A stretch of 64,000 nucleotides of DNA from IMG/VR virus record IMGVR_UViG_3300049217_000071, positions 204,345 to 268,344 of that record; one strand, given 5' to 3'. This document shows, in pieces, positions 2,283-59,653 of this stretch (within the stretch, counting starts at the first letter, position 1; every line of letters begins with the position of its first letter). Under the pieces are notes generated by a model. The model was not told the DNA's origin and ran no database searches. It saw only the letters and a program-made list of their open reading frames with translations. Both the position numbers and the translations under genes were made by a program.

Positions 2283-2423
2283 TATATATGATAAGAATCG
2301 ACACAGAAAATAACAAATAATAACAAAACCTACTAATAGTTGGTCATTTCGATATGCACGATGTCAAAAAGTGTTATATATGTGATGACACCAGGCTCTC
2401 TGGGAAATGATAAGAAAGTATTT

Positions 2424-3425
2424 ATGAAGCTGAATGATTGGGCCAAAAAGGCAGGAGTGAAGTATTTGACCGCTTACAGGTGGTTCAAGAACGGCACCCT
2501 ACCTGTGCCAGCTTATCAAACTGATTCAGGAACCATCATTGTGCAAGACAATTCTGAAGTATCGGAGCAAAATATGTCTGGCAACTCTGGTGATGCAATG
2601 TCCGTCTTATTGAAAAAGACGGTCGAGTTTAGTAAGAACAATTCTTCTATCGAAGACTTTGCCGCTTATGTTATTTCCAACTTTCAACTAAAATTGAATG
2701 GCACAGCTCCCGATGGTCCAAGATATTCCAAGAACAAGCCAAAGTCAGAAGATATACAGAAGCATTTTCAGCAGTTTATTCCTGATAAAGGAAAAGAAGA
2801 ACAGCTAAAGAGTATCAAAGCTCTTATCAAAGAACAAAACAAGGGAAAAGAAACTCTCTGTTATCCAGCCTCTGCTGTTGACAAGAGGATGAATGAAGAC
2901 AAACAAAATCTCGGCCAGCTACCAACCACCGATGATCTAGGATTTATCAGCTCTGATGAATTCGTAAGTGATGATCGTGTCGATGATTGGTGTGCCGGCG
3001 ATATTGTTGAAGGTTCGGTTACACAAAGTGTTGATTTAGATTCAACTCCACAACAAATCAACTATACTGGCTCTACTAATCTAGCCTTCAACAATAACTC
3101 TAATACTCTATCAGCCAATGATAACACTATGCCTGGCACCAACTTAGGCAGTAGTGGCACCGTATCTAGTGCTTTGGCCGATTATCGCACACTTGCTGCT
3201 GTTCTTGGTGGCACTGCAACTGCCTGTTCCGCTACCCCTTTTCAGGGCACGGCATCTTCCTGGGCCCCAACTGATGGTGGCGTTTATTTCAACTCGGTTC
3301 AGCAGTCGGCTACTCCCTTTATGCCTACCAAAAAGGAACTACAATCGGCTGTCAAGGTTATAGAAACGGCAGATACTGATCAACCACGTAGCAGACGCGG
3401 CCGTAAGCCGTTCAAGAAGGTATAA
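2424..3425 (+). CDS. Hypothetical protein with N-terminal IS607 TnpA-like HTH and low-complexity C-terminus
   Basis: MKLNDWAKKAGVKYLTAYRWFKNGTLPVPAYQTDSGTIIV resembles the MerR-like DNA-binding N-terminus of IS607 serine transposases. No serine-recombinase catalytic domain follows. The start could be further upstream (ORF open from 2340). Confidence 0.7.
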   Translation: MKLNDWAKKAGVKYLTAYRWFKNGTLPVPAYQTDSGTIIVQDNSEVSEQNMSGNSGDAMSVLLKKTVEFSKNNSSIEDFAAYVISNFQLKLNGTAPDGPRYSKNKPKSEDIQKHFQQFIPDKGKEEQLKSIKALIKEQNKGKETLCYPASAVDKRMNEDKQNLGQLPTTDDLGFISSDEFVSDDRVDDWCAGDIVEGSVTQSVDLDSTPQQINYTGSTNLAFNNNSNTLSANDNTMPGTNLGSSGTVSSALADYRTLAAVLGGTATACSATPFQGTASSWAPTDGGVYFNSVQQSATPFMPTKKELQSAVKVIETADTDQPRSRRGRKPFKKV

Positions 3426-3514
3426 TGACTAAGTTTATCAAGAAACATCCCTGGCTTTTATTTCAAGAAGGTATAATGACTAAGTTTATCAAGAAACATC
3501 CCTGGCTTTTATTT
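3411..3514. repeat. Perfect 51-bp tandem duplication spanning a stop/RBS/start junction
   Basis: ttcaagaaggtataatgactaagtttatcaagaaacatccctggcttttat occurs at 3411 and again at 3462; identity runs to 3514. Confidence 0.95.
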
Positions 3515-3994
3515 AAGTGCATTGCACTTACCTCCTGGTTTTGCGGCTTCTTGGCCAAGCATTTGACCAAAGCTATGCTCCTTTTGCTAGACCTCAAGAA
3601 TAAAGATCCTAACCCACCTCCGCCACCCGCTCCAAGAGAGCCTTCTTTCGAAGATCAGATGCAAACTACCGCTCAAAAAGGCAATCTCTTCTCCGTTGCG
3701 ACTCGTGAGAGACCTAAATTCAATTTCCCGTATATTCCTGAGTGGGTAGCCAAGTCTTTCAAGGATCATACTAAGCACCCGCTTCATAATGTGAAGTTGA
3801 AGCCACCATCATTTTTGCCAATGGCCTCCAAACCGGCTCCAGAAGCACCGCTGGCTCCTACCGTAGCTCTCGAAACCACGCTTGAGGTAGGACGTGCAGC
3901 GATTGATAATCTGCGCCAAGCTGTTTCCAATATAGAAAAGGCTGTAGAGCTACCACCAACCCGCAAACTCAAGAAATCAAGTAAGAAGGGCTAA
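3425..3994 (+). CDS. Hypothetical Pro-rich protein with possible N-terminal hydrophobic segment
   Basis: 189-aa ORF abutting both neighbours, with aagaagg before the ATG. The duplication gives a second in-frame start at 3476. Confidence 0.7.
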   Translation: MTKFIKKHPWLLFQEGIMTKFIKKHPWLLFKCIALTSWFCGFLAKHLTKAMLLLLDLKNKDPNPPPPPAPREPSFEDQMQTTAQKGNLFSVATRERPKFNFPYIPEWVAKSFKDHTKHPLHNVKLKPPSFLPMASKPAPEAPLAPTVALETTLEVGRAAIDNLRQAVSNIEKAVELPPTRKLKKSSKKG

Positions 3995-3995
3995 T

Positions 3996-5165: not shown

Positions 5166-5167
5166 TT

Positions 5168-5626: not shown

Positions 5627-5627
5627 T

Positions 5628-6455: not shown

Positions 6456-6476
6456 TTTTCAGAAAGAGTAAGTGCA

Positions 6477-6767: not shown

Positions 6768-6835
6768 GCGCGTTCATTAGTTTATTTTGTCGAGATAAAG
6801 TTCGTTATATTACGTATTACAGAAAGAAGACAGAC

Positions 6836-7345: not shown

Positions 7346-7356
7346 TGGGAGATAAA

Positions 7357-8559: not shown

Positions 8560-8561
8560 TA

Positions 8562-10128: not shown

Positions 10129-10138
10129 CTATTTACAC

Positions 10139-10154
10139 TGATATATTACTTGGT
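10139..10154 (+). promoter_or_regulatory. TGATATAT-N8-ATG motif (extended -10-like, probable leaderless promoter)
   Basis: The same motif and spacing occur at 13364, 41737 and on the minus strand at 25595; there is no SD before the ATG. Confidence 0.6.
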
Positions 10155-13335: not shown

Positions 13336-13363
13336 GAAAAAATATTGAGAGCACGCAATAAGC

Positions 13364-13379
13364 TGATATATGTATCAGT
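13364..13379 (+). promoter_or_regulatory. TGATATAT-N8-ATG motif, overlapping an AATA-N6-TAT motif (13357)
   Basis: gcaataagctgatatatgtatcagtATG. Confidence 0.6.
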
Positions 13380-14285
13380 ATGAAAACTTGCTCTATGTGC
13401 GGAAAACCCAAAGATATCGGCTGCTTTGTCAAACAGGCAAAGTCAGCCGATGGTCTTTTTCCGTGGTGTGAAGATTGTCGTCGACAATACCGTAAAGATA
13501 AGTATAACGAAGATTTACAGAAGAGTCGCGATTACACCAATGATTGGAGAGCCTCTCGCATTCAATGGTTTCAAGAGCTAAAGTCTAACACGCCCTGTGT
13601 AGATTGTGTTCAGATATACGAACCATTCTGTATGGACTATGATCACGTCCCAGGTCGAGGTGAAAAAATCAAGAGTGTTAGTCGTATGGTAATAGATAAC
13701 ACATCAAAGGAAGTTATCCTTGCCGAGATAGAGAAGTGTGATCTTGTGTGCTTGTTGTGCCACAATAAACGCACATATAGTCGTTTTGATGAAGTTTTAG
13801 GAAGCGACAGAAAATATCCGCCACATGTGCAACGAAACATTGATATGATCAATAAGTTCAAGACGCATCTGTGCGTCATCTGTGGTAATCAATATGAGCA
13901 TTATAATATGCAGATTGATCACATTGATTCGATGACTAAGCTGTATGATGTATGTCAGTTGAAAAGTTGTAAAGTGGAAAAACTATTGATCGAGCTAGCA
14001 AAATGCCAAGTTCTATGCGCCCTGTGTCATCGTAGAAAATCCATTGTTGAGCAGCAGGACGACAAATACTCGGCACCCCGCCATACCCCACCCAAGCGTC
14101 AGCAGTTGTTCTACGATCCTATCACCAACACAAAAGAATGTGGACTATGTCATCAAATCAAAGATGGATCATTATTTCGCGCAAACAGTAAAACTGTGTC
14201 AGGGTTGGATACATATTGTAAGGAGTGTTTCAATGAGTATCGAAGAGAAAAACGAGCAGGAGAGGCACATACAAAAACTTCGTAA
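13380..14285 (+). CDS. HNH homing-endonuclease-like protein with two HNH domains and terminal Zn ribbons
   Basis: CVDC...DYDHV...CDLVCLLCHNKRT and CVIC...QIDHID...CQVLCALCHRRKS. Confidence 0.85.
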   Translation: MKTCSMCGKPKDIGCFVKQAKSADGLFPWCEDCRRQYRKDKYNEDLQKSRDYTNDWRASRIQWFQELKSNTPCVDCVQIYEPFCMDYDHVPGRGEKIKSVSRMVIDNTSKEVILAEIEKCDLVCLLCHNKRTYSRFDEVLGSDRKYPPHVQRNIDMINKFKTHLCVICGNQYEHYNMQIDHIDSMTKLYDVCQLKSCKVEKLLIELAKCQVLCALCHRRKSIVEQQDDKYSAPRHTPPKRQQLFYDPITNTKECGLCHQIKDGSLFRANSKTVSGLDTYCKECFNEYRREKRAGEAHTKTS

Positions 14286-14442: not shown

Positions 14443-14576
14443 TCGGCAAAGTCGTTTTGTTGTGGAGATGGTAATATTCTGTAATTTATCTAGCGGGTCC
14501 GCCTGCTGATAAAGTGCAGAATAGTATCAATATTCTTCTATCTAAGGTAGGTAGATTCTGCGCAATGGGAGACGTA

Positions 14577-15038
14577 ATGCCGAAAATTAGTATCGATTAC
14601 TCAAGTTTAGCCACACAGATCACTAAAAAAGCGTATCGACTTGCTGATGTCAAAGATCAGTTGGAGACGGTAGCATTCGACATTGTGAGATTCAAGGACG
14701 GCGATAAAGGCGCGGACTTATGGCAAGTTCAGAACGCCTCCGATGGTGATTACATCGTAGCGCTGTATGATGACGAAGAGGCCGAGAAGACCGCCGCCTC
14801 CGTGTGGGGAGTGTTGGTTTCTAAGGGCGGCAATGATTTGCAGATCTCCTACAAGGGCGATCCTTTGGTTCGACTCTCGGCTGCTAAGCTGGGTATCCCA
14901 AGTTCCGAATTACATAAGGCTGAGCAGTATCTACCAGAAAGATTGGCCACCAATCAAAAGTTGGTCAAGGCTCTTCTTAGTGAATTGACGGACGCAGCTA
15001 GACTAGAGGTATCCAAGAGATACCCAGAACTGGTATAA
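14577..15038 (+). CDS. Hypothetical protein (probable virion/head-block protein)
   Basis: RBS gggag before the ATG at 14577; first gene after the AATA-N6-TAT motif at 14529. Confidence 0.75.
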   Translation: MPKISIDYSSLATQITKKAYRLADVKDQLETVAFDIVRFKDGDKGADLWQVQNASDGDYIVALYDDEEAEKTAASVWGVLVSKGGNDLQISYKGDPLVRLSAAKLGIPSSELHKAEQYLPERLATNQKLVKALLSELTDAARLEVSKRYPELV

Positions 15039-23207: not shown

Positions 23208-23265
23208 AACCAAGCAATATCATTGCATATAACCATATGAAGAAAGCAGACCCAGAGGTATCTCA

Positions 23266-25579: not shown

Positions 25580-25600
25580 ATAGAGTAATATATCACTATT
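25580..25600. promoter_or_regulatory. Compact divergent promoter region between the HNH gene and terminase
   Basis: AATAtatcacTATT (25587-25600) fits AATA-N6-YAT on both strands. The minus strand also reads TGATATAT-N8-ATG into the HNH gene. Confidence 0.5.
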
Positions 25601-25606
25601 CCTAGT

Positions 25607-27484: not shown

Positions 27485-27566
27485 AAGCGGCCTAAATACT
27501 TGGGTTTTCTACTGATATATCACATATAGGGTATTAGTAGAGAGTATAGTGGAACTATGAGGCAAT

Positions 27567-29480: not shown

Positions 29481-29555
29481 AGAGCTAAATCCATAGATAA
29501 TCCCTCTACATATTAGAGCATACTTTTAGTAATTGCACAAAGTAAAGGGACTGCT

Positions 29556-34543: not shown

Positions 34544-34605
34544 AATATCCTTACATAATAAATGAAGTTGAGGCAACGCTGCAAATTGTAGCAATATTGC
34601 CTTAT
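34544..34605 (+). promoter_or_regulatory. Two copies of the AATA-N6-YAT motif upstream of the protease-scaffold unit
   Basis: AATAtccttaCAT at 34544 and AATAttgcctTAT at 34593. Confidence 0.5.
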
Positions 34606-34637: not shown

Positions 34638-34799
34638 ATGTCATTTATCAAACACGGTGATGGAAAAATAGTAGATGTTCTCGATGAGACCGATCTGACT
34701 GCTGAGCAAAAACAAGCGGTCAAGAAGATGTCGGAACAACTCGTCAAGCAATCTGACGATGCAACTGATTCTTCTAAAACGAAGAAGTCAGGGAGTTAA
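34638..34799 (+). CDS. Small hypothetical protein (53 aa)
   Basis: ggag RBS; MSFIKHGDGKIVDVLDETDL...KKSGS; below the length cutoff of the ORF track. Confidence 0.65.
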   Translation: MSFIKHGDGKIVDVLDETDLTAEQKQAVKKMSEQLVKQSDDATDSSKTKKSGS

Positions 34800-40921: not shown

Positions 40922-40987
40922 CCGTTTAGATAATCCTTTTGTTTCGTTATATGTAATAGAGAGCCATATAGATGACGAAGGATATTT

Positions 40988-41677
40988 ATGCTTAGATTAG
41001 TACAAGTTGGTAATACTTTACCCGTCAGTTTTATTTGCGATCCCTCGGCTGAGTTCCAGCCTGGTATGGTAGCCGAACTTACTGTTATTGGTAATCAGGT
41101 AATGGCTACTGTTAGTAATGGAACTGCCCCAATTGGTATTATTGATGATATCAAAACCAAAGCTTTTACCAACGTTTCCTGGAATGAAACGGTTATTGTG
41201 CCAGCCGTCCCTGCGGTAGGCCCCAACAATACCATCGTTACCCCAGTAGATATCAAGGCCGAATTACGCCGACCTAACATCATCCCTTCTAGTTTCAATT
41301 CTACTGTCAATGTGGTGCTCAATCCTATCAACGGTATTATTACCTTCATAGCGGGCACCCCACTCAATATCGATTTAAATGGATCTGGTTCTCCCAATGG
41401 TATCAAGGCTATTGTTAGCTACACCTATATGGTATCCAATATTCCAGGTGATGATAGCACGGCCGGTTCTGGTAGAATGACCGTTTGGTTTGAGAGAATG
41501 TTCTTCCAAACCGAACAGTATGAAACTAACCAGCAATATCCAGTGCGCGCCAATGTGTATGTGAGTGAAGTGGGGCTTCTGACCACTCGTAGGCCAAGCC
41601 CAATTCATCCAGCCGTGGGTATGGTAACAGCCCCTCCTACCCCGATGAATGCTATGGTAGAAATTTTGTGGTTCTGA
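40988..41677 (+). CDS. Probable capsid decoration/cement-like protein
   Basis: Beta-rich; DDSTAGSGRMTVW parallels HTATGSGKVTCW of 48503..49303; preceded by the AATA-N6-CAT motif at 40955. Confidence 0.5.
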   Translation: MLRLVQVGNTLPVSFICDPSAEFQPGMVAELTVIGNQVMATVSNGTAPIGIIDDIKTKAFTNVSWNETVIVPAVPAVGPNNTIVTPVDIKAELRRPNIIPSSFNSTVNVVLNPINGIITFIAGTPLNIDLNGSGSPNGIKAIVSYTYMVSNIPGDDSTAGSGRMTVWFERMFFQTEQYETNQQYPVRANVYVSEVGLLTTRRPSPIHPAVGMVTAPPTPMNAMVEILWF

Positions 41678-41736: not shown

Positions 41737-41752
41737 TGATATATAGGTTTGT
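41737..41752 (+). promoter_or_regulatory. TGATATAT-N8-ATG motif
   Basis: gtgatatataggtttgtATG. Confidence 0.6.
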
Positions 41753-47060: not shown

Positions 47061-47110
47061 TTCGGCATATCATCGCATAACAATGTGATTTTCTATAGGT
47101 GGACATCAAT

Positions 47111-48334
47111 ATGAGAAAAAGTGAAATCTTCGAGTCGTTCGTCAAAATAGCCCAAGAAAAGGGCCTTACTTCCGCAACCGAAAAGGGTGATGGTGAGCAC
47201 GAATTTGCCGAACATACGGAAAAGAACTTAGATGATCCAAGATGGGACTCTCTGAGCATTGAGCAAATTGGCAAGCTATACGGCACCAAGCCAAAGGCCC
47301 CCAAGGAGATGGAATATGAGCGCAACATCATCGAGAACGCTCATCCAAAGCCAGTTGTTTTCTTCATGTCCCACGATAAGCTCAATAGTTTGGTAGAAAA
47401 CGAAAACGAAGGCCAAGACGCCCGCATTCACATTTCTCTCAAAGAACCTGATGGTCATTTGACTCAACGCAAATATGCGGAGAAGAAACTAGTTCTTTCT
47501 TTGGTCAGATTAGCTAACGATTTGGACAATCGCAATCAAGATGAACTACGCGCTTTAGCTGATGTCTGTTTAGTTCAGACCGCCACCCCAGGTCTCAAGA
47601 AAACCGCTATTCCACTTTTAGTGTATCCTATTGCCGCCACTATAGGTGCCATTTACGCTAAGAATCACCTAGATTTCCATAGTGATGGCTTTACGGCTGA
47701 CTATGAAAAGACAGTAGGCGAAATAGATGACCTGCTCAATTCTAACAGCAGCTTGCAAACTACAGTAGGGGCCGGATACACTTATACCCCGCAATTCTTA
47801 CAAACCGTCAATCAACTCAAGACTGATTTGGCCGAGTTGAATACAGAGAGGCAGAAGGCTTTGACTATCATAGCAAATCTAAAAACCCCTAGAAACGCCG
47901 ATGAACTCAAGGTGTTAGCTCAGCAACCAGAAACTCATGAGGCGGTGCAAGCTCTCAACGATCTCAATACGGTAATGAATAAAATTGCTACTTTCATTTT
48001 GAAGATAGGCCGTGATTTTAGTAGCGCCTCCTATAAGCAGCAAGCTATTGAACACAAAGGCTTTTTATCCTCTTTGGTAGATTACACAGGAGTTCTCCAT
48101 GGTGGGGCTGGTTTAGTGGCCGATGACTTCGATGATGTGCGTAATGCCCTCAAGACTTTGATGAACGATGTTGTTGAAATTGTTGGAGAATTGAAGAATT
48201 CCGAAACTCTTCGAAAAACTGTTATACGAGAGTTATCTGCTGCCCAAGGTGCCGTTTCTAGAATGACAGAACAGGCTCCCGCCGCTAAACCGGCTGAAAA
48301 TCCAGTAGCAGAACTTGATGAAGAAGTAGGATAA
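47111..48334 (+). CDS. Hypothetical protein (probable internal virion protein)
   Basis: aggtgg RBS; VKIAQ, RKYAE and KKTAI followed by hydrophobic PLLVYPIAATIGAIYA; helical hairpin RLANDLD. Confidence 0.8.
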   Translation: MRKSEIFESFVKIAQEKGLTSATEKGDGEHEFAEHTEKNLDDPRWDSLSIEQIGKLYGTKPKAPKEMEYERNIIENAHPKPVVFFMSHDKLNSLVENENEGQDARIHISLKEPDGHLTQRKYAEKKLVLSLVRLANDLDNRNQDELRALADVCLVQTATPGLKKTAIPLLVYPIAATIGAIYAKNHLDFHSDGFTADYEKTVGEIDDLLNSNSSLQTTVGAGYTYTPQFLQTVNQLKTDLAELNTERQKALTIIANLKTPRNADELKVLAQQPETHEAVQALNDLNTVMNKIATFILKIGRDFSSASYKQQAIEHKGFLSSLVDYTGVLHGGAGLVADDFDDVRNALKTLMNDVVEIVGELKNSETLRKTVIRELSAAQGAVSRMTEQAPAAKPAENPVAELDEEVG

Positions 48335-48502
48335 CTAATCCCTGGATCCGCTATCTAATCTGGGCATACCCAAATATATAGATGACTTTCAAGGAACTTT
48401 TGTTGAAATACATATCAATAACGGAGTATCCTTCATAGATTTGTAAGTTCATAGGTGTAAGTAACTATGCCCTCGGGGCATTAAGATTATAGGAAAATAA
48501 CA

Positions 48503-49303
48503 ATGTCTCTAAAACTTTTGCAACCAGGCACTCAGCCTTTAGGTCAGTTTGACGGTCTCGATGTTGATTGCTTGACCCTCAAGGGAGGCGAATGCGTTTC
48601 TTTCGCCCAAGTTACTACATCCGGTCAACCAGGTGTCACCACCGCAGGTCTTGACCAAGCAGCTTATGACGTGTTTGACGGTTACGTCAACGTGGGTGGC
48701 TCTCCAGCCGTCTTCAAGCGTCCAGCCGTTACCCGTCTTTGGGGTTTCGGTGGTTATCTAAGCGACGGTTATGCTCGTCCAGTCATGCTAGCAGACGAAG
48801 GTATCATCGGATACGGCACACTTTTCGGAGCTGTCGTTGGTGGTACTGTTGGTCAGCAAGTGAACGGCCCAACCACCTTTACTGGTGCTATCTTGGGACC
48901 TCACACTGCAACCGGTTCTGGCAAGGTAACTTGCTGGGATAAGCCAGGTCTCTACGCTGTCTCTCTAGACGCCGTTGACACCAGCGCCTCTGTTGGTCTC
49001 CAGCCAACTAACACCAGCTTGACTGTTGGTGCACCTCTCTCCTTCACCGTTTCAACCGGTTTGGGAACTGGTGGTCTTTTGACCCCATGGAACGGTGCCA
49101 ACGCCATCAACGGTGCTGGTGCAACAAACAGCCCAATCGTTGGACACTTCATTGAGTTCAACACAAACCAGTCCCTCGTGACTACGCCTAACTACTTGGT
49201 GGCCGCTCTAAACAGCCCATCCGGTGTTGTCAGCTCCGTAGGCCCAAGAGCCTTCCAGTTTGCAACCATTTACTTCCAGCCACCAGCTCAGTCTCCATAC
49301 TAA
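48503..49303 (+). CDS. Probable capsid decoration/cement protein
   Basis: Gly/Thr/Val-rich beta protein directly upstream of the MCP, with highly biased codons; motif at 48417 upstream. Confidence 0.6.
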   Translation: MSLKLLQPGTQPLGQFDGLDVDCLTLKGGECVSFAQVTTSGQPGVTTAGLDQAAYDVFDGYVNVGGSPAVFKRPAVTRLWGFGGYLSDGYARPVMLADEGIIGYGTLFGAVVGGTVGQQVNGPTTFTGAILGPHTATGSGKVTCWDKPGLYAVSLDAVDTSASVGLQPTNTSLTVGAPLSFTVSTGLGTGGLLTPWNGANAINGAGATNSPIVGHFIEFNTNQSLVTTPNYLVAALNSPSGVVSSVGPRAFQFATIYFQPPAQSPY

Positions 49304-49342: not shown

Positions 49343-49370
49343 AAAAAGAGCCCGCAAGGGCTCTTTTTTT
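49343..49370. terminator. Bidirectional intrinsic terminator
   Basis: aaaaagagccc-gcaa-gggctcttttttt: perfect stem, GNRA loop and U tract. Confidence 0.9.
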
Positions 49371-49384: not shown

Positions 49385-49397
49385 AATAATCCGTTAT
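49385..49397 (+). promoter_or_regulatory. AATA-N6-TAT motif upstream of the major capsid gene
   Basis: gtAATAatccgtTATT lies between the terminator and the MCP RBS. Confidence 0.55.
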
Positions 49398-49465
49398 TCA
49401 TTTATCACGCAGTCTTGCGTGGCTGGTTTTTACCGGCAACTAATTCCAATAAACGTGGAGACACA

Positions 49466-50479
49466 ATGAATATGTTTTCTAGCCAAGGTCAAGTAAACGC
49501 CTCTAATCTAAAGGACGCATTACAGGCCCTAGTAAAGTACGCAGCCATTCTCGAAGAGAATGTTCCTGCTAACCAAGGTCTCGCAGGCCAACCAGCCTTG
49601 AGCGATGACAAGCGTGACGAACTAATTTCTCGCGCTATCTTGACCCAAGACGGTAAGATTGCTCTAGCTCAGGCTATGGCAAACCCAATCCGTAGAAACT
49701 TGGATTACCACGGTATTGCACGTCGTGCTCTAGTCGTTGACCCATTGCCACAAGGTGCAATGCCAACCTACGATAGAGATATCGATGTTGCCGCTGTCGT
49801 TATTTCCAGCAACGGTACTGGCCCAGAGTCCAGAGTTTTCGGTGACAGAGTAGTTGTCCCTGAATTCGAAATCTACGCAAACCCAACTGTGCGTATTGCA
49901 GAAGTAAAGCGTCGTAGATTTAACGTAATTGACAGAGCTGTTCAGAAGGCACGTCAAGAAATCATGGCTCAAGAAGATGCAAACATCTTCGCAGCTCTTG
50001 ATGCAGCTTCTTCTGTTGAAAACACTCTAACTGACATCGCTGATGCAGGTTTGCTCAAGAGAGATCTTGTCGAAATCAAGCAACAGATTGATCGTTGGGA
50101 CTTAGTTACCACCAAGTACTTCATGAACATCAATGAGTTCACTGATATTTTGAAGTGGGGTTCAGGTGGTGGACAAGGCGTAGGCGGCGGAGATTTCGAT
50201 CCTGTCACCATGCGTGAAGTTCTACAAACTGGTCTATATGCTCACATCTGGGGTACAGACATCATGGTCAGCAAGATCGTTCCACCAGGAACCATCTACG
50301 GCGTTGCAGACCCTGAGTTTGTCGGCGTCATGCCTATCCGTCAAGACATTGAAGTCTTGCCGGCCGATGAGCCAAAGCAACTAAAGTTGGGCTGGGTAGT
50401 TTCCGAGATTATCGGTATTGCTATCGTAAACCCAAGAGGTTGTTCCGCAGGTCGTAAGTCAGTCGTAATCGGTGCGTAA
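49466..50479 (+). CDS. Major capsid protein (HK97-like fold inferred)
   Basis: ggag RBS before the ATG at 49466; 337 aa; ALAQAMANPIRRNLDY, VPEFEIYANP, GLYAHIWGTDIMVS, GWVVSEIIGIAIVNP; terminators on both sides. Confidence 0.88.
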   Translation: MNMFSSQGQVNASNLKDALQALVKYAAILEENVPANQGLAGQPALSDDKRDELISRAILTQDGKIALAQAMANPIRRNLDYHGIARRALVVDPLPQGAMPTYDRDIDVAAVVISSNGTGPESRVFGDRVVVPEFEIYANPTVRIAEVKRRRFNVIDRAVQKARQEIMAQEDANIFAALDAASSVENTLTDIADAGLLKRDLVEIKQQIDRWDLVTTKYFMNINEFTDILKWGSGGGQGVGGGDFDPVTMREVLQTGLYAHIWGTDIMVSKIVPPGTIYGVADPEFVGVMPIRQDIEVLPADEPKQLKLGWVVSEIIGIAIVNPRGCSAGRKSVVIGA

Positions 50480-50511
50480 TTCAGCCTGATTGACTAACTA
50501 AAGATACAGAG

Positions 50512-50540
50512 AAGGTCCATAGGAAACTATGGACCTTTTC
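50512..50540. terminator. Intrinsic terminator after the MCP (shared with the convergent HNH gene)
   Basis: aaggtccatag-gaaa-ctatggacctt, perfect 11-bp stem. Confidence 0.85.
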
Positions 50541-51727: not shown

Positions 51728-52960
51728 TTAGTATTGTCTGGCTATTTCTAAGAGCCTATATTTGGTATTGTGTTCAGGATGACGCAAAATCTCCAAATAA
51801 CACTCATCCAAAGCTTTCTTGATACGGGGGCCGGCCACCATTCCAGCATTTAGCAAATCATCTCCATTTATTTGCATTTCACGCTTGGAAAAGACGATTT
51901 CGGTTTGGTAGGCGTCTAATAGCTTAATCGGTATTTCTTGGGCCGCACTTAACCCTATAAATTGCTGCAAGGTCTGTTCCCAAGGGTCGGGAGCATGGTT
52001 TTTGAGGACCGCCATAAAGCTCTTATAAGATGAAATCGTGTTTTTATCCTGGAAAATAGAAAACCGCTCCCCTAATTCCAAAAGAAATAGAGTTTTCTTG
52101 ATTTCTCGGTTGGAAAACTTCAAGTTTAGCAGTTCTTCTTTGACCTGAGGGACAGGTAATTTGTTATACAGGAAGGCTAGACGAGTCTCTAGCTCCCCCA
52201 TACACCTGTCTTGGTGTGGAAGTAAAGGGAGCACTCGCCGGGCCAGTAGAGGGCAAGCAATGTCTAAAGCTCCCGATTTCTGTAGAAGCTGCAAACCATA
52301 GGAGGCTTGTCCCGTCATCAAGATTTTGCACAACTCATCTTGAATACGTTCCTTGGAAACCTTTTTGAGCGTTTCCAAACTATCTTTCATACCTTGAAAA
52401 GTAGCTTGGTCGATAGTATACCCAAAACGTGCGGCAAATCGTGCTACTCGCATGATACGCAGCCCGTCTTCTTGAAACCTAACGGTAGGTTTACCTACGG
52501 CTCGGATCAAGCCATTTTGGAGGTCAGTATATCCGTCATATGGATCTACCATACGATGAGATAGTGGATCATAGGCGATAGCGTTGATGGTCAAGTCTCG
52601 ACGGGACAAGTCTTGTTCCACATTCATGACGAAAAAGACTTCCTCCGGCCTACGACCGTCTTTGTATTCTCCTTCAATACGGAAGGTGGTCACCTCGAAA
52701 TGATTCTCCACCCCTTCATCCATACAGACGGTGACGGTTCCATGCTGCAAACCCGTAGGGATGGTTTTAGGAAAGAGCTTCAGCACCTTTTCAGGCGAAG
52801 CGTCGGTAGTAATATCCCAGTCTTTAGGGATGTGTCCAAGAATCAAATCTCGTACGCATCCGCCTACTATATAGGCCTGATAATTATGTTGATTGAGGGT
52901 ACGACATACCTCAATGGCCAAAGGGTGAATTAGGTCTAATGAAAGTTGTATGGGTTTCAT
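51728..52960 (-). CDS. cca: CCA-adding tRNA nucleotidyltransferase
   Basis: YIVGGCVRD, DWDITT, EVTTFR, Y.DGRRP loop, DLSRRDLTINA, RFQEDGLRIMRVARF, SKERI, INGDDL. Confidence 0.92.
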   Translation of the reverse strand: MKPIQLSLDLIHPLAIEVCRTLNQHNYQAYIVGGCVRDLILGHIPKDWDITTDASPEKVLKLFPKTIPTGLQHGTVTVCMDEGVENHFEVTTFRIEGEYKDGRRPEEVFFVMNVEQDLSRRDLTINAIAYDPLSHRMVDPYDGYTDLQNGLIRAVGKPTVRFQEDGLRIMRVARFAARFGYTIDQATFQGMKDSLETLKKVSKERIQDELCKILMTGQASYGLQLLQKSGALDIACPLLARRVLPLLPHQDRCMGELETRLAFLYNKLPVPQVKEELLNLKFSNREIKKTLFLLELGERFSIFQDKNTISSYKSFMAVLKNHAPDPWEQTLQQFIGLSAAQEIPIKLLDAYQTEIVFSKREMQINGDDLLNAGMVAGPRIKKALDECYLEILRHPEHNTKYRLLEIARQY

Positions 52961-52967
52961 AGCGGGC

Positions 52968-52995
52968 ATCGTAAAATTTACAAATTACGTGTCAA
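52968..52995 (-). promoter_or_regulatory. Sigma70-like promoter, probably leaderless
   Basis: TTGACA (52995-52990), 16 nt, TACGAT (52973-52968), then 7 nt to the ATG at 52960. Confidence 0.45.
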
Positions 52996-53072
52996 GGTCG
53001 CCCTCTCAAAAAACCGTCCAAAAGTGTAATAAAAAGGCATCATATTAGAGTTCTGTCTAAAGATAGAGGAAT

Positions 53073-53939
53073 ATGCGACTTTTATTCGAGGTTTCTGAAA
53101 TATACAATCTGATTTCTAGAGGCGCCCAAAATGTGCTTGCTAGAAAGCAGTCTATGTTGCTGAGAAAAATAGCTTTGGAGTCTGTATCTTCTGGTAAAGG
53201 TTTTACTAAACAGGCTTTTGATACTCGTCGAATTAACCAAGAAACGGACTACATTCCACGTAGGGGGCTACAAAGCTATCATAAAAGTGAGAAGTTTATT
53301 TCTGATGCCATGGCTGTGAAGGTACAAGCTTTTGCTAAACTGGCCAAGATATTAGATCAACTTAAACTAGAGTATGGTAGGGAGCCGGAATGGCAAGAAA
53401 GTTATACTAGAGTACTCAATGCTGCCATCAATAAAAGTCTCCGCACGGAACAGACGGACGAGGATTTTAGTGATTCGCAACCATCCATGGCTAGTCTGAG
53501 TTATTTAGAAGAACTGATGTATGTTAGATATAGGCTAACACCAGAAGGTATTATGAGTATGTCGGAAGAAAATCTGCGCACCGCTATTCTCAATAAAGAT
53601 GAGCTTTTGGTGCGTCAAGGTATTTCTAACCCAACACGTCCTATCGAAATAACTCCGGGGGATGTTTCCAAATACAGTTATGATCAAATGATGGAAAAAA
53701 TGCTATCTACCATGGCTCAAGTGATGAGCGCCTATAAGCCTCCGCAGCCTGATGATAACTTGACTAGTAAGTTATTTGATGTCAAAGCCACTAAAGAATC
53801 ACCAGAAATAGAGAGAACCGTTACTATCACCATCAAGGACAAGATTGCTGATAAACTTGAAAAGAGGAGTCAGGAATCCTTGGAGGACAAAATTACCATT
53901 GATTCACTTGATGAATTGGTTGTGGAGAACTCAAAATGA
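53073..53939 (+). CDS. Hypothetical protein (probable virion protein)
   Basis: gagga RBS; motif at 53028 upstream; RKIAL and TKQAF. Confidence 0.78.
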   Translation: MRLLFEVSEIYNLISRGAQNVLARKQSMLLRKIALESVSSGKGFTKQAFDTRRINQETDYIPRRGLQSYHKSEKFISDAMAVKVQAFAKLAKILDQLKLEYGREPEWQESYTRVLNAAINKSLRTEQTDEDFSDSQPSMASLSYLEELMYVRYRLTPEGIMSMSEENLRTAILNKDELLVRQGISNPTRPIEITPGDVSKYSYDQMMEKMLSTMAQVMSAYKPPQPDDNLTSKLFDVKATKESPEIERTVTITIKDKIADKLEKRSQESLEDKITIDSLDELVVENSK

Positions 53940-54631
53940 GTAGCGAATCAGAGTTCGCATACGCGCCCAAATACAATACTCACTTTATTGTCAAAAACAC
54001 TTGTACAGATAATCACAAAACTATCTTCATTTTCAATTATCCAATCAACTGGGGACAAACCAGAGATATTCTAGCCATTCCAGGAATAGAAGAGGCAGAC
54101 ATTCGAGCTTCTCTTCTCAAAGGTGTTCTGCGACATAAATTTCTAAATGGTGATATCAGTCTAGTGGCCAGCAATATTGATCTGTTGCAATTCAGCACCA
54201 AACAACGCGCTTTCCTGGAAAGTTTTGGTTTCAGTACAGGCGTTCAAGTCGGCTATAACGAGTTGGATGGCTATGTGCAGAGTTTGCTATCTGGTGGCGG
54301 TGGAGGTGGAATCACTCCTGCTCAACACGAAACTTTGAGACAGCTTATTCATTTTATTGATGAGGGTCCAGGTGATGGTTTTGCTTCAGGAGCTTTTAAG
54401 GTCACTCTACCACTGGCCAGTCCCTTTCCAACCTCGATTACTTGGTACCTCAGTATGGCTATGTCACAGAAACTTGTGGAAAAGTTTATTACTTACAACG
54501 CAAGTAAGTTCCCGATTACTATTCATTGGAATATGTATGATACTGATGGGGTGACAATCATTCATACCGTAATAGATACAATAGTTTACAGCGCAGCTTT
54601 CGAAGCTACCAGAACCAGGGTAATAAGCTAA
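53936..54631 (+). CDS. Hypothetical structural protein
   Basis: 231 aa, two-domain appearance split by SGGGGGG. Confidence 0.75.
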   Translation: MSSESEFAYAPKYNTHFIVKNTCTDNHKTIFIFNYPINWGQTRDILAIPGIEEADIRASLLKGVLRHKFLNGDISLVASNIDLLQFSTKQRAFLESFGFSTGVQVGYNELDGYVQSLLSGGGGGGITPAQHETLRQLIHFIDEGPGDGFASGAFKVTLPLASPFPTSITWYLSMAMSQKLVEKFITYNASKFPITIHWNMYDTDGVTIIHTVIDTIVYSAAFEATRTRVIS

Positions 54632-54657
54632 CATAGGGTAAAGAAAGAGAAAGTAAT

Positions 54658-55155
54658 ATGTCCGCCGATTCTCCAGCAGCAATACTATTTGACGAACTTG
54701 GTAATCCGGTTGGGGTTATCTTTGATGGCACAGAATATCGTTTGCAGACTCAAACCACTATTACGGATGGTTATGAGGCTGGCCCAGTAGCAGTCAAGCC
54801 GCCTTTTATTGCGGCTGATTCCGCCGACCCCGCCCTAGTAGTTGCTATCTCTCCCAACAACCCAATTACTACTTCTGTAGCTCGTCCGGCTAACAACAAC
54901 ACTACGAGTGTTGCGGCTTCCACTTCTAACGCAGTGCTACTTGCTTCCAATTCGATTAGATTGGGAGCCACTCTATATAATGATTCCTCGTCTGTACTTT
55001 ATATGAAACTAGGCGCTACCGCTAGTTTGACTGATTTTACCAACAGGATATTTCCATCTTGCTACTATGAAGTTCCATTTGGTTATACCGGAGAAATAGA
55101 CGGTTTCTGGGTGACTGCTGTTGGACATGCTAGAGTAGGCGAACTAGTTCCATAA
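54658..55155 (+). CDS. Fibre/appendage-like structural protein (shortest member of a 3-gene family)
   Basis: Shares the N-terminal SP...L(F/Y) start and the C-terminal ~80-aa domain (ND...LY...Y(Y/W)E.P..(Y/F).G.(I/V).G.W) with the next two genes. Confidence 0.7.
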   Translation: MSADSPAAILFDELGNPVGVIFDGTEYRLQTQTTITDGYEAGPVAVKPPFIAADSADPALVVAISPNNPITTSVARPANNNTTSVAASTSNAVLLASNSIRLGATLYNDSSSVLYMKLGATASLTDFTNRIFPSCYYEVPFGYTGEIDGFWVTAVGHARVGELVP

Positions 55156-55222
55156 CAATGCCACTATCTATGAATAAAAAAGTATGTTATTCGTAGGATC
55201 TTCCACACATACAGGATAAAAT

Positions 55223-56539
55223 ATGTCAAGCCAATCACCAGTAGTAGTTTTATACAGCTCGGACGGTTATGAATTAGGGGTGGATTCTGGCATTGCCATT
55301 CCAGCTAATACTAGAGGGCTTCTGTTTGCAGGCTCTGATGGAACTAATGCAAGATTTGTTTTAACAGATATTTCTGGACATTTAATTACCGTCAGTGATG
55401 GACCAACTGCTGCCACTCCTCCAGCCGATGCAAGTTTAGCAGGAGCTGTGGTTAATACCACTGCACTGTCTGGTTTAACCAACACAGATATGTATCCACT
55501 CTCACTTACGACAGCAGCTTTGCTACGTATTGACGGTGTGTATCCTACAGCGGCTGCCGCCCCCTCTACCGATGCTATGTATGTGGCTGGCGCTGTAACT
55601 ACGGCTGCACCTAGCTACACTACTGGTCAAATGGATCCACTATCCCTTAACTTGGCTGGTGGTTTACGTATTGACGGTGTTTCCGCTACCGGCGCTGCAA
55701 CTGGTGCTACCGCTATGTTGTCTGGTGGTGCTGTTACTACCGCTGCTCCAGCTTATACGACTGGCCAAATGGATCCATTGTCCCTAACTACTCTTGGAGG
55801 CTTGCGCATTGATGGCGTTTATGCCGTTGCAACTGCTAATGCTACTGCTGCTGACGTAGGAAGCGTTGGAGGTTATGTTACTACGGCTGCCCCGACTTAT
55901 ACCACGGGTCAATTGAACCCAATTTCTCTAAACACTGCTGGTGGCTTACGTCTTGACGGTGTTTCTGCTACCGCAGCTACAACTGGTGGCACGGCTATGT
56001 TGTCTGGTGGTGCTGTTACTACCGCTGCTCCAACTTACACAACCGGTCAAATGGATCCGTTGTCCCTAACTACTCTTGGAGGCTTGCGCATTGATGGCGT
56101 TTATGCCGTTGCAACTGCTAATGCTACTGCCGCAGATGTAACCAATGTAGGTGGTTATGTTACTACCGCAGCTCCAACTTATACAACGGGTCAACTCAAT
56201 CCATTATCTTTGGATACTAGTGGTAACTTGCGTGTTGCTGGATCTTTTACTGCAACCAAGTCAACTACCACCGCTCTAACCAGCGTAGCTTCTAACGGAG
56301 CCAGTGTTACTTTATTGGCCGCTAATGCTGCCCGTATTAGCGCTACATTTTTCAATGATAGTCCAACCGAAATACTTTATCTTGGAATGACTTCTAATCC
56401 AGTTTCATTAACATCTTACTCAATCAAGTTAATGCCATATTCTTATTGGGAACTTCCAATTGATTATACCGGACAAATTAACGGCATTTGGAACAACCAA
56501 GCCGGTGGTGCTGTCAGGATTACAGAACTTACTCCTTAA
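55223..56539 (+). CDS. Fibre-like structural protein with internal repeats
   Basis: Ala/Thr/Gly-rich; six TTAAP.YTTGQ..PLSL...GGLR.DG units; family C-terminal domain. Confidence 0.8.
   Translation: MSSQSPVVVLYSSDGYELGVDSGIAIPANTRGLLFAGSDGTNARFVLTDISGHLITVSDGPTAATPPADASLAGAVVNTTALSGLTNTDMYPLSLTTAALLRIDGVYPTAAAAPSTDAMYVAGAVTTAAPSYTTGQMDPLSLNLAGGLRIDGVSATGAATGATAMLSGGAVTTAAPAYTTGQMDPLSLTTLGGLRIDGVYAVATANATAADVGSVGGYVTTAAPTYTTGQLNPISLNTAGGLRLDGVSATAATTGGTAMLSGGAVTTAAPTYTTGQMDPLSLTTLGGLRIDGVYAVATANATAADVTNVGGYVTTAAPTYTTGQLNPLSLDTSGNLRVAGSFTATKSTTTALTSVASNGASVTLLAANAARISATFFNDSPTEILYLGMTSNPVSLTSYSIKLMPYSYWELPIDYTGQINGIWNNQAGGAVRITELTP
55440..56250 (+). repeat. Six coding repeats of about 46-49 aa; highest identity at a 282-nt period
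   Basis: The stretch from 55712 recurs nearly identically from 55994. Confidence 0.9.
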
Positions 56540-56606
56540 CTGATAGGCTTTGAGAGGTATTTAGCTAATAGAACTCAAAGAATATGTGAGTAGATAGGGA
56601 AAGTGT

Positions 56607-58982: not shown

Positions 58983-59025
58983 TGAATTTCAACGCATTTT
59001 ACTACATCACGGATATAGGCAAGTT

Positions 59026-59622
59026 ATGGACTGTATTGTTTATAAGCACACTAACAAAATAAACGGAAAAATCTACGTTGGCCAAACGTGGCGGACTATT
59101 CGGCAGAGATCTAAAAATGGTACTCATTATAAAGGTAATCCACATTTTTGGGCCGCTATTCAGAAGTATGGTTGGAAAAATTTTCAGTCAGAATTGATTA
59201 CTGTCGCTCATACGCAAGAGATTGCTAATTATTGGGAACAATATTTCATCGACCAATATGATAGCCGTAACCGTGATACGGGCTATAATTTTAGAGATGC
59301 TGGAAGTCATGGCAAAATGTCTACGGAAAGCAGGCTAAAAATGTCGGAAGCTAGGATGGGCAAGGAGCCGTGGAATAAGGGAAAGTTAGGCTGTTATTCG
59401 GGTGCCGTTTTGGAACAGATGTCAAAATCTAGAAAAGGCAAGACATCATGTATGAAAGGTAAAGCTCATACCAAACAGGCCAGGCAACAAATGTCAATAT
59501 CTAGGATGGGATACCAAAATCATTTGGGTAAATCACATACCAATGAGGCCAAACAAAAGATGTCTGTGGCTTTCAGGGGTAAAACCTGGAAACTGATTGA
59601 TGGAAAAAGAGTTTGGCAATAA
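59026..59622 (+). CDS. GIY-YIG homing-endonuclease-like protein
   Basis: IVYKHTN...IYVGQT, GYN, NUMOD3-like repeats; C-terminal TWKLIDGKRVW matches the 39434 gene. Confidence 0.9.
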   Translation: MDCIVYKHTNKINGKIYVGQTWRTIRQRSKNGTHYKGNPHFWAAIQKYGWKNFQSELITVAHTQEIANYWEQYFIDQYDSRNRDTGYNFRDAGSHGKMSTESRLKMSEARMGKEPWNKGKLGCYSGAVLEQMSKSRKGKTSCMKGKAHTKQARQQMSISRMGYQNHLGKSHTNEAKQKMSVAFRGKTWKLIDGKRVWQ

Positions 59623-59653
59623 TCAGACATTACTATGAATTAGGAGATAAGTT

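What the first reader, a model, noticed from the sequence alone, without database searches (positions are those of the whole stretch)
2335..59630. Candidate phage late-promoter motif AATA-N6-YAT
Exact + strand copies lie just upstream of genes at 2335, 13357, 14529, 23216, 25587, 34544, 34593, 40955, 48417, 49385, 53028, 55173 and 59618, mostly preceded by (G/T)(C/T). Near matches occur at 29499 (AATC), about 47075 (CATA) and 58985 (AATT). They mark the starts of the head block, terL, protease-scaffold, both decoration genes, the MCP (right after a strong terminator) and fibre genes. Caveat: the motif is short and AT-rich, so chance hits are expected genome-wide. The case rests on enrichment in the few short intergenic gaps and on the fixed spacing.
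Basis: partly seen in the sequence, partly recalled or inferred. Interest (0 to 1): 0.6.

Follow-up and report, generated by a model that had tools for sequence, protein, structure and literature searches.

The report
Conserved promoter box of a megaphage
The short motif AATA-N6-YAT is a real, evolutionarily conserved promoter-like signal of an uncultivated family of giant phages (about 450 kb); it heads most structural-gene operons, but it is not limited to late genes, and the polymerase form that reads it is not known.

Summary
All 13 listed copies are exact. They lie in the 4.7% of the window that is intergenic (odds ratio 32, p=4e-13; 13 observed against 1.6±1.2 in dinucleotide shuffles). 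Only the 6-nt spacer is enriched. The full motif is T-R-K-Y-AATA-N6-YAT.

It is under selection. In diverged IMG/VR relatives it is kept, with a variable spacer, before the orthologues of gene 48503 (45 of 53 distinct sequences) and of gene 53073 (36 of 39).

It behaves as a core promoter:
- tRNA 5' ends start 23-35 nt after it.
- Twenty SD-less genes in three genomes, terL included, have their ATG exactly 6-7 nt after YAT.
- At the MCP it sits between a strong terminator and a covarying 5' hairpin.

"Late" is only partly right. The plain form fills a third of the upstream regions in the structural module of two genomes. A composite form with a full extended -10 heads tRNA arrays and a homing-endonuclease gene. 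A box with a fuller -10-like downstream block, but no extended -10 G, heads the family's single sigma-factor gene.

Complete relatives encode that sigma factor and no detectable phage RNA polymerase; this record is truncated before the gene. No RNA data exist, so the start site, timing and reader are inferred.

The parts
2335..2347 (+). AATA-N6-YAT copy, 50 nt before gene 2385-3425
   Evidence: Exact match, intergenic. Not strictly conserved in G001 or G002. It is the weakest of the listed copies.
13357..13369 (+). Composite copy: AATA box plus TGATAT(AT) at 13364-13369, before the HNH endonuclease gene 13380-14285
   Evidence: The ATG lies 10 nt after TGATAT, which is the geometry of the extended -10 class. 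The gene is absent from G001.
14529..14541 (+). AATA-N6-YAT copy, 48 nt before gene 14577-15038. A tandem AATA-N6-AAT lies at 14473-14485.
   Evidence: Conserved at -48/-48/-49 in the window, G001 and G002, with a changed spacer.
23216..23228 (+). AATA-N6-YAT copy, 50 nt before gene 23266-24228
   Evidence: Only one-mismatch variants are found in G001 and G002.
25587..25599 (+). AATA-N6-YAT copy in the 27-nt divergent gap before terL (25607-27484). The ATG follows 7 nt after YAT and there is no SD.
   Evidence: terL by PHROG. G001 has a strict copy with the ATG 6 nt after YAT. In close relatives NATA-N6-YAT-N6-ATG is kept. It overlaps a - strand TGATAT at 25590-25595 that serves gene 24818-25579.
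34544..34605 (+). Two tandem copies (34544-34556 and 34593-34605) before small ORF 34638-34799 and the 1229-aa gene with a protease-like N-terminal region, 34805-38494
   Evidence: Both copies are conserved in G001 (-92, -39) and G002 (-121, -59). Weak PHROG match to a head maturation protease.
40955..40967 (+). AATA-N6-YAT copy, 33 nt before gene 40988-41677
   Evidence: Strict copy in G002 at -51; ACTA variant in G001 at -32.
48417..48429 (+). AATA-N6-YAT copy, 86 nt before gene 48503-49303 (the gene just upstream of the MCP)
   Evidence: A strict motif is present in 45 of 53 distinct upstream sequences of relatives, mostly 79-93 nt from the ATG, with a variable spacer.
49343..49368 (+). Strong intrinsic terminator just before the MCP promoter copy
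   Evidence: 11-pair stem followed by a T run.
49385..49397 (+). AATA-N6-YAT copy, 81 nt before the MCP gene 49466-50479
   Evidence: MCP by PHROG, E=3.5e-78. The motif is kept in 23 of 59 distinct relatives; the others read through from the upstream gene.
49405..49465 (+). Structured MCP 5' UTR: covarying hairpin (49405-49422), invariant GCTGG-loop-CCGGC hairpin (49422-49437), conserved A/T-rich tract and SD
   Evidence: The first hairpin begins 8-10 nt after YAT, which fits a transcript 5' end there.
50509..50540 (+). Strong terminator after the MCP gene
   Evidence: 14-pair stem.
53028..53040 (+). AATA-N6-YAT copy, 45 nt before gene 53073-53939, in a divergent gap
   Evidence: A strict motif is present in 36 of 39 distinct relatives at 41-52 nt (mode 45). 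It is followed by a YATWWT hexamer.
54622..54634 (+). It overlaps the end of gene 53936-54631 and lies 36 nt before gene 54658-55155.
   Evidence: Good flanking context (GGGT). Not conserved in G001 or G002.
55173..55185 (+). AATA-N6-YAT copy, 50 nt before gene 55223-56539
   Evidence: No conserved counterpart found.
59618..59630 (+). AATA-N6-YAT copy overlapping the end of gene 59026-59622, 36 nt before gene 59654-60295
   Evidence: PWM score 17.7 bits. No orthologue in G001 or G002.
29499..29511 (+). Near match (AATC), 57 nt before gene 29556-30794
   Evidence: The orthologous gap of G001 has a strict copy at -47, and G002 has a TATA variant at -50. This is probably a degenerate member.
47066..47078 (+). 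Variant CATA-N6-CAT, 45 nt before gene 47111-48334
   Evidence: The same CATA variant is kept at -44 in G001 and -48 in G002.
58985..58997 (+). Near match (AATT) before gene 59026-59622; unsupported
   Evidence: No conserved counterpart.
10139..10144 (+). Second promoter class: TGATAT(AT) with the ATG of gene 10155 ten nt downstream. The same arrangement occurs at 41737-41742 (gene 41753). The box at 27513-27518 stands 48 nt before the portal gene.

Best explanation
AATA-N6-YAT (fuller form T-R-K-Y-AATA-N6-Y-A-T) is a core promoter element of this megaphage family. It has no -35 element.

Transcription most likely starts 7-10 nt downstream of the T of YAT. This gives three kinds of transcript:
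- leaderless mRNAs where an ATG sits 6-7 nt after YAT, terL among them;
- 25-70 nt SD-bearing leaders elsewhere;
- very short tRNA leaders.

The plain form is the main promoter of the structural (presumably late) module.

A composite form has a downstream block that extends to G-N-TATAWW, a full extended -10. It heads tRNA arrays and the HNH gene. The sigma gene's box carries a fuller hexamer-like downstream block (TATACT, TATAAC) without the G9.

Inferred, not shown: the plain form is read by host core RNA polymerase carrying the family's single 209-aa sigma-70-family factor. The forms with a fuller -10 can also be read by the host primary sigma. That would let the sigma gene be switched on by the host enzyme and then reinforce itself.
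For: Shown:
- Enrichment specific to intergenic DNA, to the sense strand and to the 6-nt spacer.
- Coupling of the two blocks.
- A PWM finds 65 + and 27 - strand sites in the 268-kb record, against about 10 per strand in simulated sequence.
- In G000, 13 of the best sites lie 23-35 nt before a tRNA 5' end, never closer. In G001, 9 lie at 24-31 nt.
- In three genomes the first ATG of an ORF of at least 80 aa sits 6 or 7 nt after YAT at 20 sites without SD. The background is 0-3 per offset and the reversed control gives 0.
- That peak is lost when A4, Y11, A12, T13 or the spacer length is changed.
- Orthologous conservation with a free spacer: 45 of 53, 36 of 39 and 23 of 59, plus five sites shared with both G001 and G002.
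- The MCP copy lies between a terminator and a covarying 5' hairpin that starts 8-10 nt after YAT.
- The terL copy fills a 27-nt divergent gap.
- Regional bias towards the structural module in two genomes.

Bearing on the reader of the motif:
- All 10 large relatives tested hold a Sigma70_r2 match. It is a single match in 8 of them and passes Pfam's cut-off in 9. The one ORF scanned in full (G001, 209 aa) has region 2 above cut-off and region 4 below it; G002, G003 and G005 have ORFs of the same length.
- No RNAP beta or beta' match was found in the five large relatives tested, G001-G004 for both families and G005 for beta only.
- No canonical -35/-10 enrichment in the window.
- The sigma gene carries TATCAATA-N6-TAT about 45 nt upstream in 7 relatives.
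Against: - There is no transcript data, so the start site and timing are inferred.
- The sigma gene is not in this truncated record.
- The sigma gene carries the same box. That needs either host recognition or read-through to start expression, and it fits a host-sigma reading equally well.
- The two blocks are only 10 bp apart, too close for region 4 plus region 2 of a normal sigma factor.
- If the start is at the ATG 6-7 nt after YAT, YAT would occupy -9 to -7 and the usual -11 A would be missing. If YAT is -12 to -10, the start is 3 nt too close.
- Plain copies also occur, at 2-3 times expectation, outside the structural module.
Confidence: 0.55

Rival explanations
1. The motif is read by the host primary-sigma holoenzyme. 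YAT is the first half of an ordinary -10 hexamer (YATNNW). The AATA box at about -22 to -19 is an auxiliary element, read by the polymerase itself or by a phage-made adaptor, in the manner of sigma appropriation. The phage sigma serves some other promoter set.
For: - Composite copies extend to G-N-TATAWW, a good extended -10.
- A separate class, TGNTAT without AATA, shows the canonical 9-10 nt distance to SD-less ATGs. Sequences like the downstream block therefore do act as -10 elements here.
- In the 48503 and 53073 orthologue sets the sixth hexamer base is a conserved T.
- The sigma gene itself carries the box.
Against: - SD-less ATGs tied to AATA-N6-YAT lie 6-7 nt after YAT, not 9-10. That is 3 nt too close for a hexamer starting at Y.
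- Plain copies lack TG and often lack a T at the last hexamer position.
- No -35 element is present.
- No adaptor protein was identified.
Confidence: 0.3
2. A different register. The upstream block (TRKY-AATA) is the -10-like element, as in T4 late promoters or the AR9 late promoter A(-11)ACA-N6-U-A/G(+1). Transcription starts at the A of YAT.
For: - The architecture is the same as the AR9 consensus (PMC7598289).
- Most of the information lies in one contiguous 8-nt block.
- Y-A is the usual -1/+1 pair.
- TATCAATA matches the T4 late TATAAATA (my own knowledge) at 7 of 8 positions.
- ATG overlapping YAT starts ORFs of at least 80 aa at 7 sites.
Against: - The first A, which would be the key -11 base, is the most replaceable position.
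- This register would give SD-less leaders of exactly 8-9 nt at 20 genes with no reason for the fixed length.
- It would leave a 9-10 nt tail before the MCP 5' hairpin.
- tRNA ends pile up at 23-27 nt with a sharp lower limit.
- No phage multisubunit RNAP was found.
Confidence: 0.15
3. The motif is not a promoter core. It is an operator for a phage DNA-binding regulator, or an RNA-level signal such as a processing site.
For: - Two NATA half-sites one helical turn apart would suit a protein bound to one face of the DNA.
- Orientation with the genes would also fit an RNA signal.
Against: - It stands directly after strong terminators and in divergent gaps where no upstream transcript exists.
- Its distance to SD-less ATGs and tRNA ends is fixed.
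- Many of these gaps hold no other promoter-like element.
Confidence: 0.05

Closest known systems
Extended -10 bacterial promoters (TGnTATAAT, no -35 needed)
   Same: No -35 element. All information lies within about 25 bp of the start. Composite copies contain G-N-TATAWW, and a sister class (TGNTAT) in the same genomes shows canonical spacing to leaderless ATGs.
   Different: Plain copies lack TG. They have an invariant AATA exactly 6 nt upstream of YAT. Their coupled ATGs lie 3 nt closer than in the TGNTAT class.
Phage T4 late promoter TATAAATA, read by gp55 with gp33 and the sliding clamp (my own knowledge)
   Same: A short A/T-rich box without -35, heading the structural genes of a large phage that encodes its own sigma-like factor. 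TATCAATA matches at 7 of 8 positions.
   Different: - The consensus here is TRKY-AATA plus an obligatory second block, YAT, after 6 nt.
- The family's sigma has both region 2 and region 4, whereas gp55 does not (my own knowledge).
- No gp55, gp33 or clamp dependence was tested.
Late promoter of Bacillus jumbo phage AR9, A(-11)ACA-N6-U-A/G(+1), read by its non-virion RNA polymerase (PMC7598289)
   Same: The same layout: a 4-mer, six free bases, then pyrimidine-purine.
   Different: - AR9 uses its own multisubunit polymerase and uracil DNA, and reads the template strand.
- No beta or beta' homologue was found here or in the five relatives tested.
- The indirect evidence places the start downstream of YAT, not at it.
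Phage-encoded sigma-70-family factors that redirect host polymerase (SPO1 gp28 and gp33/34, phiEco32 gp36; my own knowledge)
   Same: A single small sigma-70-family gene in every large relative tested, and a phage-specific motif before the structural genes.
   Different: - No experimental link exists between this sigma and this motif.
- The sigma has no close relative among deposited phages: one tblastn hit at 25% identity.
- The sigma gene itself carries the motif.

Membership tests
Canonical sigma-70 promoter | A -35 hexamer 16-18 bp upstream of a TATAAT-like -10 | tested here: not met
   Consensus sites are not enriched in the window: 37 against 33, 27 against 31 and 23 against 34 in shuffles. 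The logo shows no conserved block beyond T at -3 relative to AATA.
Extended -10 promoter | TG one base upstream of a -10 hexamer, with the start about 7 nt after the hexamer | tested here: inconclusive
   The feature is met by the composite copies and by the separate TGNTAT class, whose ATGs lie 9-10 nt after TGNTAT. Plain copies lack TG, and their coupled ATGs lie 6-7 nt after YAT.
T4-type late promoter | A single 8-bp TATAAATA box at -10; dependence on gp55, gp33 and the sliding clamp | tested here: not met
   The motif is two-part with an obligatory YAT. The consensus of the upstream block is TRKYAATA. Factor dependence cannot be tested here.
AR9-type non-virion RNAP late promoter | A phage-encoded multisubunit RNA polymerase | tested here: not met
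   PF00562 gave no match in G000 or in G001-G005. PF00623 gave no match in G000-G004. Both models detected all 14 control genomes. Very divergent jumbo-phage subunits could still escape these models.
AR9-type non-virion RNAP late promoter | Start at the purine that follows the pyrimidine of the second block | not testable with these tools
   No RNA runs hold this sequence. Indirect evidence points downstream of that position.
Late temporal class | Transcripts appear late in infection and depend on phage protein synthesis | not testable with these tools
   The phage is uncultivated and has no RNA runs. The only evidence is positional bias towards the structural module.
Functional promoter | Primary transcript 5' ends at a fixed distance from the motif | not testable with these tools
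   Proxies only: tRNA 5' ends, the SD-less ATG offset, and the terminator-motif-hairpin order at the MCP.
Sigma-70 family (the factor proposed as reader) | Region 2 and region 4 domains | tested here: inconclusive
   Tested on the G001 orthologue only (209 aa): Sigma70_r2 scores 30 bits against a cut-off of 24, so region 2 is met. Sigma70_r4 scores 19.7 bits against 24.1, below cut-off. TIGR02937 scores 56 bits against 42.9. The gene lies beyond the end of this record.

The most novel reading that the evidence does not exclude
The plain AATA-N6-YAT box is a new kind of sigma-dependent promoter. A megaphage-encoded sigma-70-family factor would read two short blocks one helical turn apart, at about -19 to -16 and -9 to -7. 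It would need neither a -35 element nor the usual -11 adenine. It would fire directly onto start codons, so that terL and some twenty other genes are made from leaderless mRNAs. The sigma gene would reinforce its own expression through a copy of the box that also has a fuller -10.
Probability: 0.3. Interest if true: 0.65.

Novelty: new variant of a known kind. Interest (0 to 1): 0.5.

Why it matters
Giant uncultivated phages are known almost only from contigs, and their gene-expression programmes are essentially unknown.

This work gives, for one widespread soil, freshwater and moss clade (317 IMG/VR contigs share the MCP at E<=1e-3; the 80 best are 90-97% identical):
- a usable promoter model;
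- transcription-unit boundaries for the structural module;
- evidence for at least two promoter geometries, plus a third, unrelated, strand-specific word in a GC-rich block of relatives;
- evidence that many genes lack any leader;
- a concrete, testable pairing of a phage sigma factor with a motif.

The motif can also be used to annotate starts and operons in related contigs.

For a promoter specialist the unusual point is the geometry: two blocks 10 bp apart, with the start apparently 7-8 nt after the second. The finding remains a member of the broad, well-known class of phage-specific promoters.

Tried and rejected
- **Similar deposited phages.** Megablast of 20 kb against deposited phages found nothing. 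terL has only about 26% identity to Bacillus siphophage terminases.
- **Transcript data.** No run on record as RNA holds the MCP region. The only full holders are two moss metagenome samples that may be the source. Read laying was therefore not used: contigs of DNA runs cannot show transcript ends.
- **Known RNA families.** Rfam found nothing in the window.
- **Sigma and RNAP in the own record.** Nothing was found. The record is only 62% complete, and the T7-type RNAP model detected none of its control genomes, so that blank says little.
- **PWM in G002.** The PWM trained here was uninformative in the AT-rich relative G002 (89 against 77 sites on the two strands). It gave only 46 against about 28 expected in G001. 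The upstream-region and orthologue tests were used instead.
- **Short contigs as mRNA ends.** Reading short IMG/VR contigs (L017, L027, L042) as possible mRNA ends gave contig ends unrelated to the motif.
- **Host.** MCP relatives are binned in Bacteroidia, Chitinophagales and Ca. Berkiella MAGs. This is too weak to name a host.
- **Sigma-motif correlation.** All 10 large relatives tested have a sigma gene, so presence or absence cannot be correlated with the motif. The most distant relative (G006, terL 46% identical) shows no motif excess, and its best sigma match is a longer ORF (285 aa).
- **TAG recoding.** Two tRNA(CUA) genes suggested it, but it is not supported: only two ORF pairs would join. 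No other genetic code was used anywhere.
Full report
**What the window is**

- The window is the last 64 kb of a 268,344-bp IMG/VR virus record. CheckV rates the record 62% complete.
- Nearly all genes lie on the + strand.
- PHROG profiles identify four structural genes: terL (25607-27484), portal (27567-29480), a 1229-aa protein with a weak protease-like N-terminal match (34805-38494) and the major capsid protein (49466-50479).
- No deposited phage is similar at the DNA level.
- The MCP has 317 relatives in IMG/VR at tblastn E<=1e-3. The 80 best are 90-97% identical, and complete genomes among them measure 447-481 kb. DNA around the MCP is only about 70-75% identical, which makes these relatives useful for footprinting.
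- The sequence was found in moss metagenomes, with partial matches in lake-water and soil metagenomes.

- Every listed coordinate is exact.
- Over the whole window the excess is modest: 33 hits against 20.8±4.8 in shuffles.
- The signal lies in where the hits are:
  - Thirteen of the 23 + strand hits lie wholly inside the 2,984 nt (4.7%) of intergenic DNA. The odds ratio is 32 and p=3.6e-13.
  - Dinucleotide-preserving shuffles of those same gaps give 1.59±1.24, never more than 7 in 2000.
  - The opposite strand of the gaps has 2 hits.
  - Among spacers of 2-11 nt, only 6 is enriched (13 against 0-4).
- An unbiased count of gapped words across the whole record ranks AATA-N7-ATA, AATA-N6-TAT, AATA-N6-CAT and GATATAT directly after tRNA T-arm words.
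- The logo extends upstream to T-R-K-Y-AATA. It shows a weak G two bases before Y and an A after YAT.
- The two blocks are coupled. Given TNKYAATA, YAT follows in 16 of 32 intergenic copies and 5 of 102 coding copies.

**Conservation**

- With the complete relatives G001 (480 kb, GC 43%) and G002 (452 kb, GC 36%) fetched, I compared orthologous gaps:
  - The copies at 14529, 34544, 34593, 48417 and 53028 are present in both relatives at nearly the same distance from the start codon, with different spacer letters.
  - The terL copy is kept in G001.
  - The AATC near-match at 29499 corresponds to a strict copy in G001.
  - The site near 47075 is a CATA-N6-CAT variant (47066-47078). It is kept as CATA in all three genomes.
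- Across the MCP-flank loci of IMG/VR, the strict motif is found upstream of:
  - the 48503 orthologue in 45 of 53 distinct sequences (proteins 48-79% identical);
  - the 53073 orthologue in 36 of 39 (39-70% identical; modal distance 45 nt);
  - the MCP in 23 of 59.
- Where the MCP copy is missing, the MCP follows the upstream gene directly.
- AATA and YAT stay fixed while the six bases between them drift. That is the pattern expected of a two-block recognition site.

**Evidence that it is a promoter, and where transcription starts**

1. tRNA genes.
   - The record has 53 tRNA genes and a tmRNA, all on the + strand.
   - Thirteen of the best-scoring copies lie 23-35 nt (from the first A of AATA) before a tRNA 5' end, never closer.
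   - In G001, nine copies do the same at 24-31 nt.
2. SD-less start codons.
   - Over G000, G001 and G002, the first ATG of an ORF of at least 80 aa sits exactly 6 or 7 nt after the T of YAT at 20 sites, none with a Shine-Dalgarno sequence.
   - Other offsets have 0-3 sites, and a reversed-pattern control has none at those two offsets.
   - terL is one of the 20. Its copy fills a 27-nt divergent gap, and close relatives keep NATA-N6-YAT-N6-ATG.
3. Natural variants serve as a mutational scan.
   - The 6-7 nt peak survives replacement of the first or second A.
   - It weakens on loss of T3.
   - It vanishes on loss of A4, Y11, A12 or T13, or with spacers of 5 or 7.
4. The MCP unit is ordered as follows:
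   - a strong terminator (49343-49368);
   - the motif (49385-49397);
   - a hairpin with compensatory changes that starts 8-10 nt after YAT;
   - an invariant second hairpin;
   - the SD and the gene;
   - a terminator (50509-50540).
5. Canonical -35/-10 sites are not enriched anywhere in the first 60 kb of the window.

Together these place the start most likely 7-10 nt after YAT. No RNA run holds the sequence, so this is inference.

**A second promoter geometry**

- TGNTAT without AATA shows its own sharp peak. The first ATG of long SD-less ORFs lies 9-10 nt after it at 27 sites, and GATATAW gives 16 sites at 10 nt. That is the textbook spacing for an extended -10 promoter that starts at the A of the ATG.
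- Window examples are genes 10155, 41753, 24818-25579 (- strand) and the HNH endonuclease gene 13380-14285.
It is a composite of AATA box plus TGATATAT.
- The tRNA copies are composites of this kind, with a G at position 9 and TATAWW.
- The sigma-gene copies are different. Their downstream block reads TATACT or TATAAC, which looks like a -10 hexamer, but the G lies at position 8 or 10 rather than 9.
- The 3-nt difference between the two ATG peaks is the main unexplained detail. It is also the main reason to think that the plain box is read differently from an ordinary -10.

**Is it 'late'?**

I counted copies only in true upstream regions and compared them with shuffles of those regions.

| Genome and region | Plain copies | Regions holding a plain copy | Composite copies | Expected, all copies |
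|---|---|---|---|---|
| G000, this window (204-268 kb) | 13 | 12 of 40 | 2 | 2.1 |
| G001, syntenic 210-300 kb module | 15 | 14 of 42 | 0 | 2.4 |
| G000, first 30 kb | 0 | 0 of 26 | 0 | 0.8 |
| G001, first 40 kb | 0 | 0 of 33 | 0 | 1.1 |
| G001, GC-rich block (420-480 kb) | 1 | 1 of 70 | 0 | 1.0 |

- Elsewhere the plain form runs at 2-3 times expectation.
- Composite copies cluster at the tRNA arrays.
- So the plain box is the characteristic promoter of the structural module. The box as such is not exclusive to it, and the time of use cannot be tested.

**Who reads it?**

- The record itself has no Sigma70_r2, RNAP beta or T7-type RNAP match, but it ends 14 kb after the MCP.
- All 10 large relatives tested hold a Sigma70_r2 match, a single one in 8 of them. 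In G001 it lies about 87 kb past the MCP.
- The one ORF scanned in full, from G001, is 209 aa, with region 2 above Pfam's cut-off and region 4 below it. It matches PHROG sigma factors.
- The five relatives tested, G001-G004 for both families and G005 for beta only, have no beta or beta' match.
- The sigma has no close kin among deposited phages.
- Its gene is preceded, about 45 nt upstream, by TATCAATA-N6-TAT in G001, G002, G003, G005, G008, G009 and G010.
- I therefore favour host core polymerase plus this sigma for the plain box. The copies with a fuller -10 would serve both the host sigma and the phage sigma. This step is inferred.
- The host-sigma reading and the AR9/T4-late register (start at the A of YAT; AR9 consensus from PMC7598289) remain open and are scored as rivals.

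**Limits**

- Gene calls outside the window come from a simple script of mine.
- The host is unknown.
- No alternative genetic code was used.

Noticed in passing
window 10139-10144, 41737-41742, 25590-25595 (-), 13364-13369; genome-wide in G000, G001 and G002: A second promoter class, TGNTAT(AT), has the first ATG of long SD-less ORFs exactly 9-10 nt downstream at 27 sites. This is canonical extended -10 geometry and implies widespread leaderless mRNAs in this phage family.
   Followed up: partly
window 49405-49465 and the same place in 19 relatives (alignment A1): The MCP 5' UTR is structured and conserved. It has a first hairpin with compensatory changes, an invariant GCTGG-loop-CYGGC hairpin, then AAATAATTCYTATAAA and the SD. 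It is kept even in relatives that lack the promoter copy. It has no Rfam match.
   Followed up: partly
G001 420-480 kb (loci L136-L138) and G002 400-452 kb plus 0-100 kb; absent from G000: Relatives carry a GC-rich block (50-56% against about 42%) of small genes, almost every one preceded by a strand-specific word. In G001 the core of that word, TCCCATTCA (fuller form GGCTCCCATTCAC), occurs 60 times forward and once reverse. In G002 it is CCCATC, 360 forward and 7 reverse. This is a third, unrelated promoter-like or regulatory class, possibly the early region. This record lacks the block.
   Followed up: partly
G000 32-72 kb, 109-114 kb and 157-165 kb (outside the window): There are 53 tRNA genes and a tmRNA (tag ADEFAFAEAA), all on the + strand. 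Two are tRNAs with a CUA anticodon, at 161750 and 163289. TAG ends only 19 of 383 called genes, and no clear TAG recoding was found.
   Followed up: partly
window 13380-14285: An HNH homing-endonuclease gene (PHROG E=7e-39) is inserted in the structural region with its own composite promoter copy. G001 has no counterpart.
   Followed up: partly
window 25580-25606: The 27-nt divergent gap between gene 24818-25579 (-) and terL holds two overlapping, near-palindromic promoter boxes, one on each strand. Both genes lack an SD.
   Followed up: partly
G001 343260-343935 (L090) and the same place in G002, G003, G005, G008, G009 and G010: The family's sigma-factor gene always carries TATCAATA-N6-TAT about 45 nt upstream. 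This suggests self-reinforcing expression.
   Followed up: partly
L139, L140, L141: MCP relatives sit on contigs binned into Bacteroidia, Ca. Berkiella and Chitinophagales MAGs, the last on a 383-kb contig. This is a weak host hint, or a binning artefact.
   Followed up: no
window 52968-52995 (-): One of the few good canonical -35/-10 matches (TTGACA-16-TACGAT) lies just upstream of the - strand gene 51728-52969, overlapping its first codon, in the same divergent gap as the 53028 copy.
   Followed up: no
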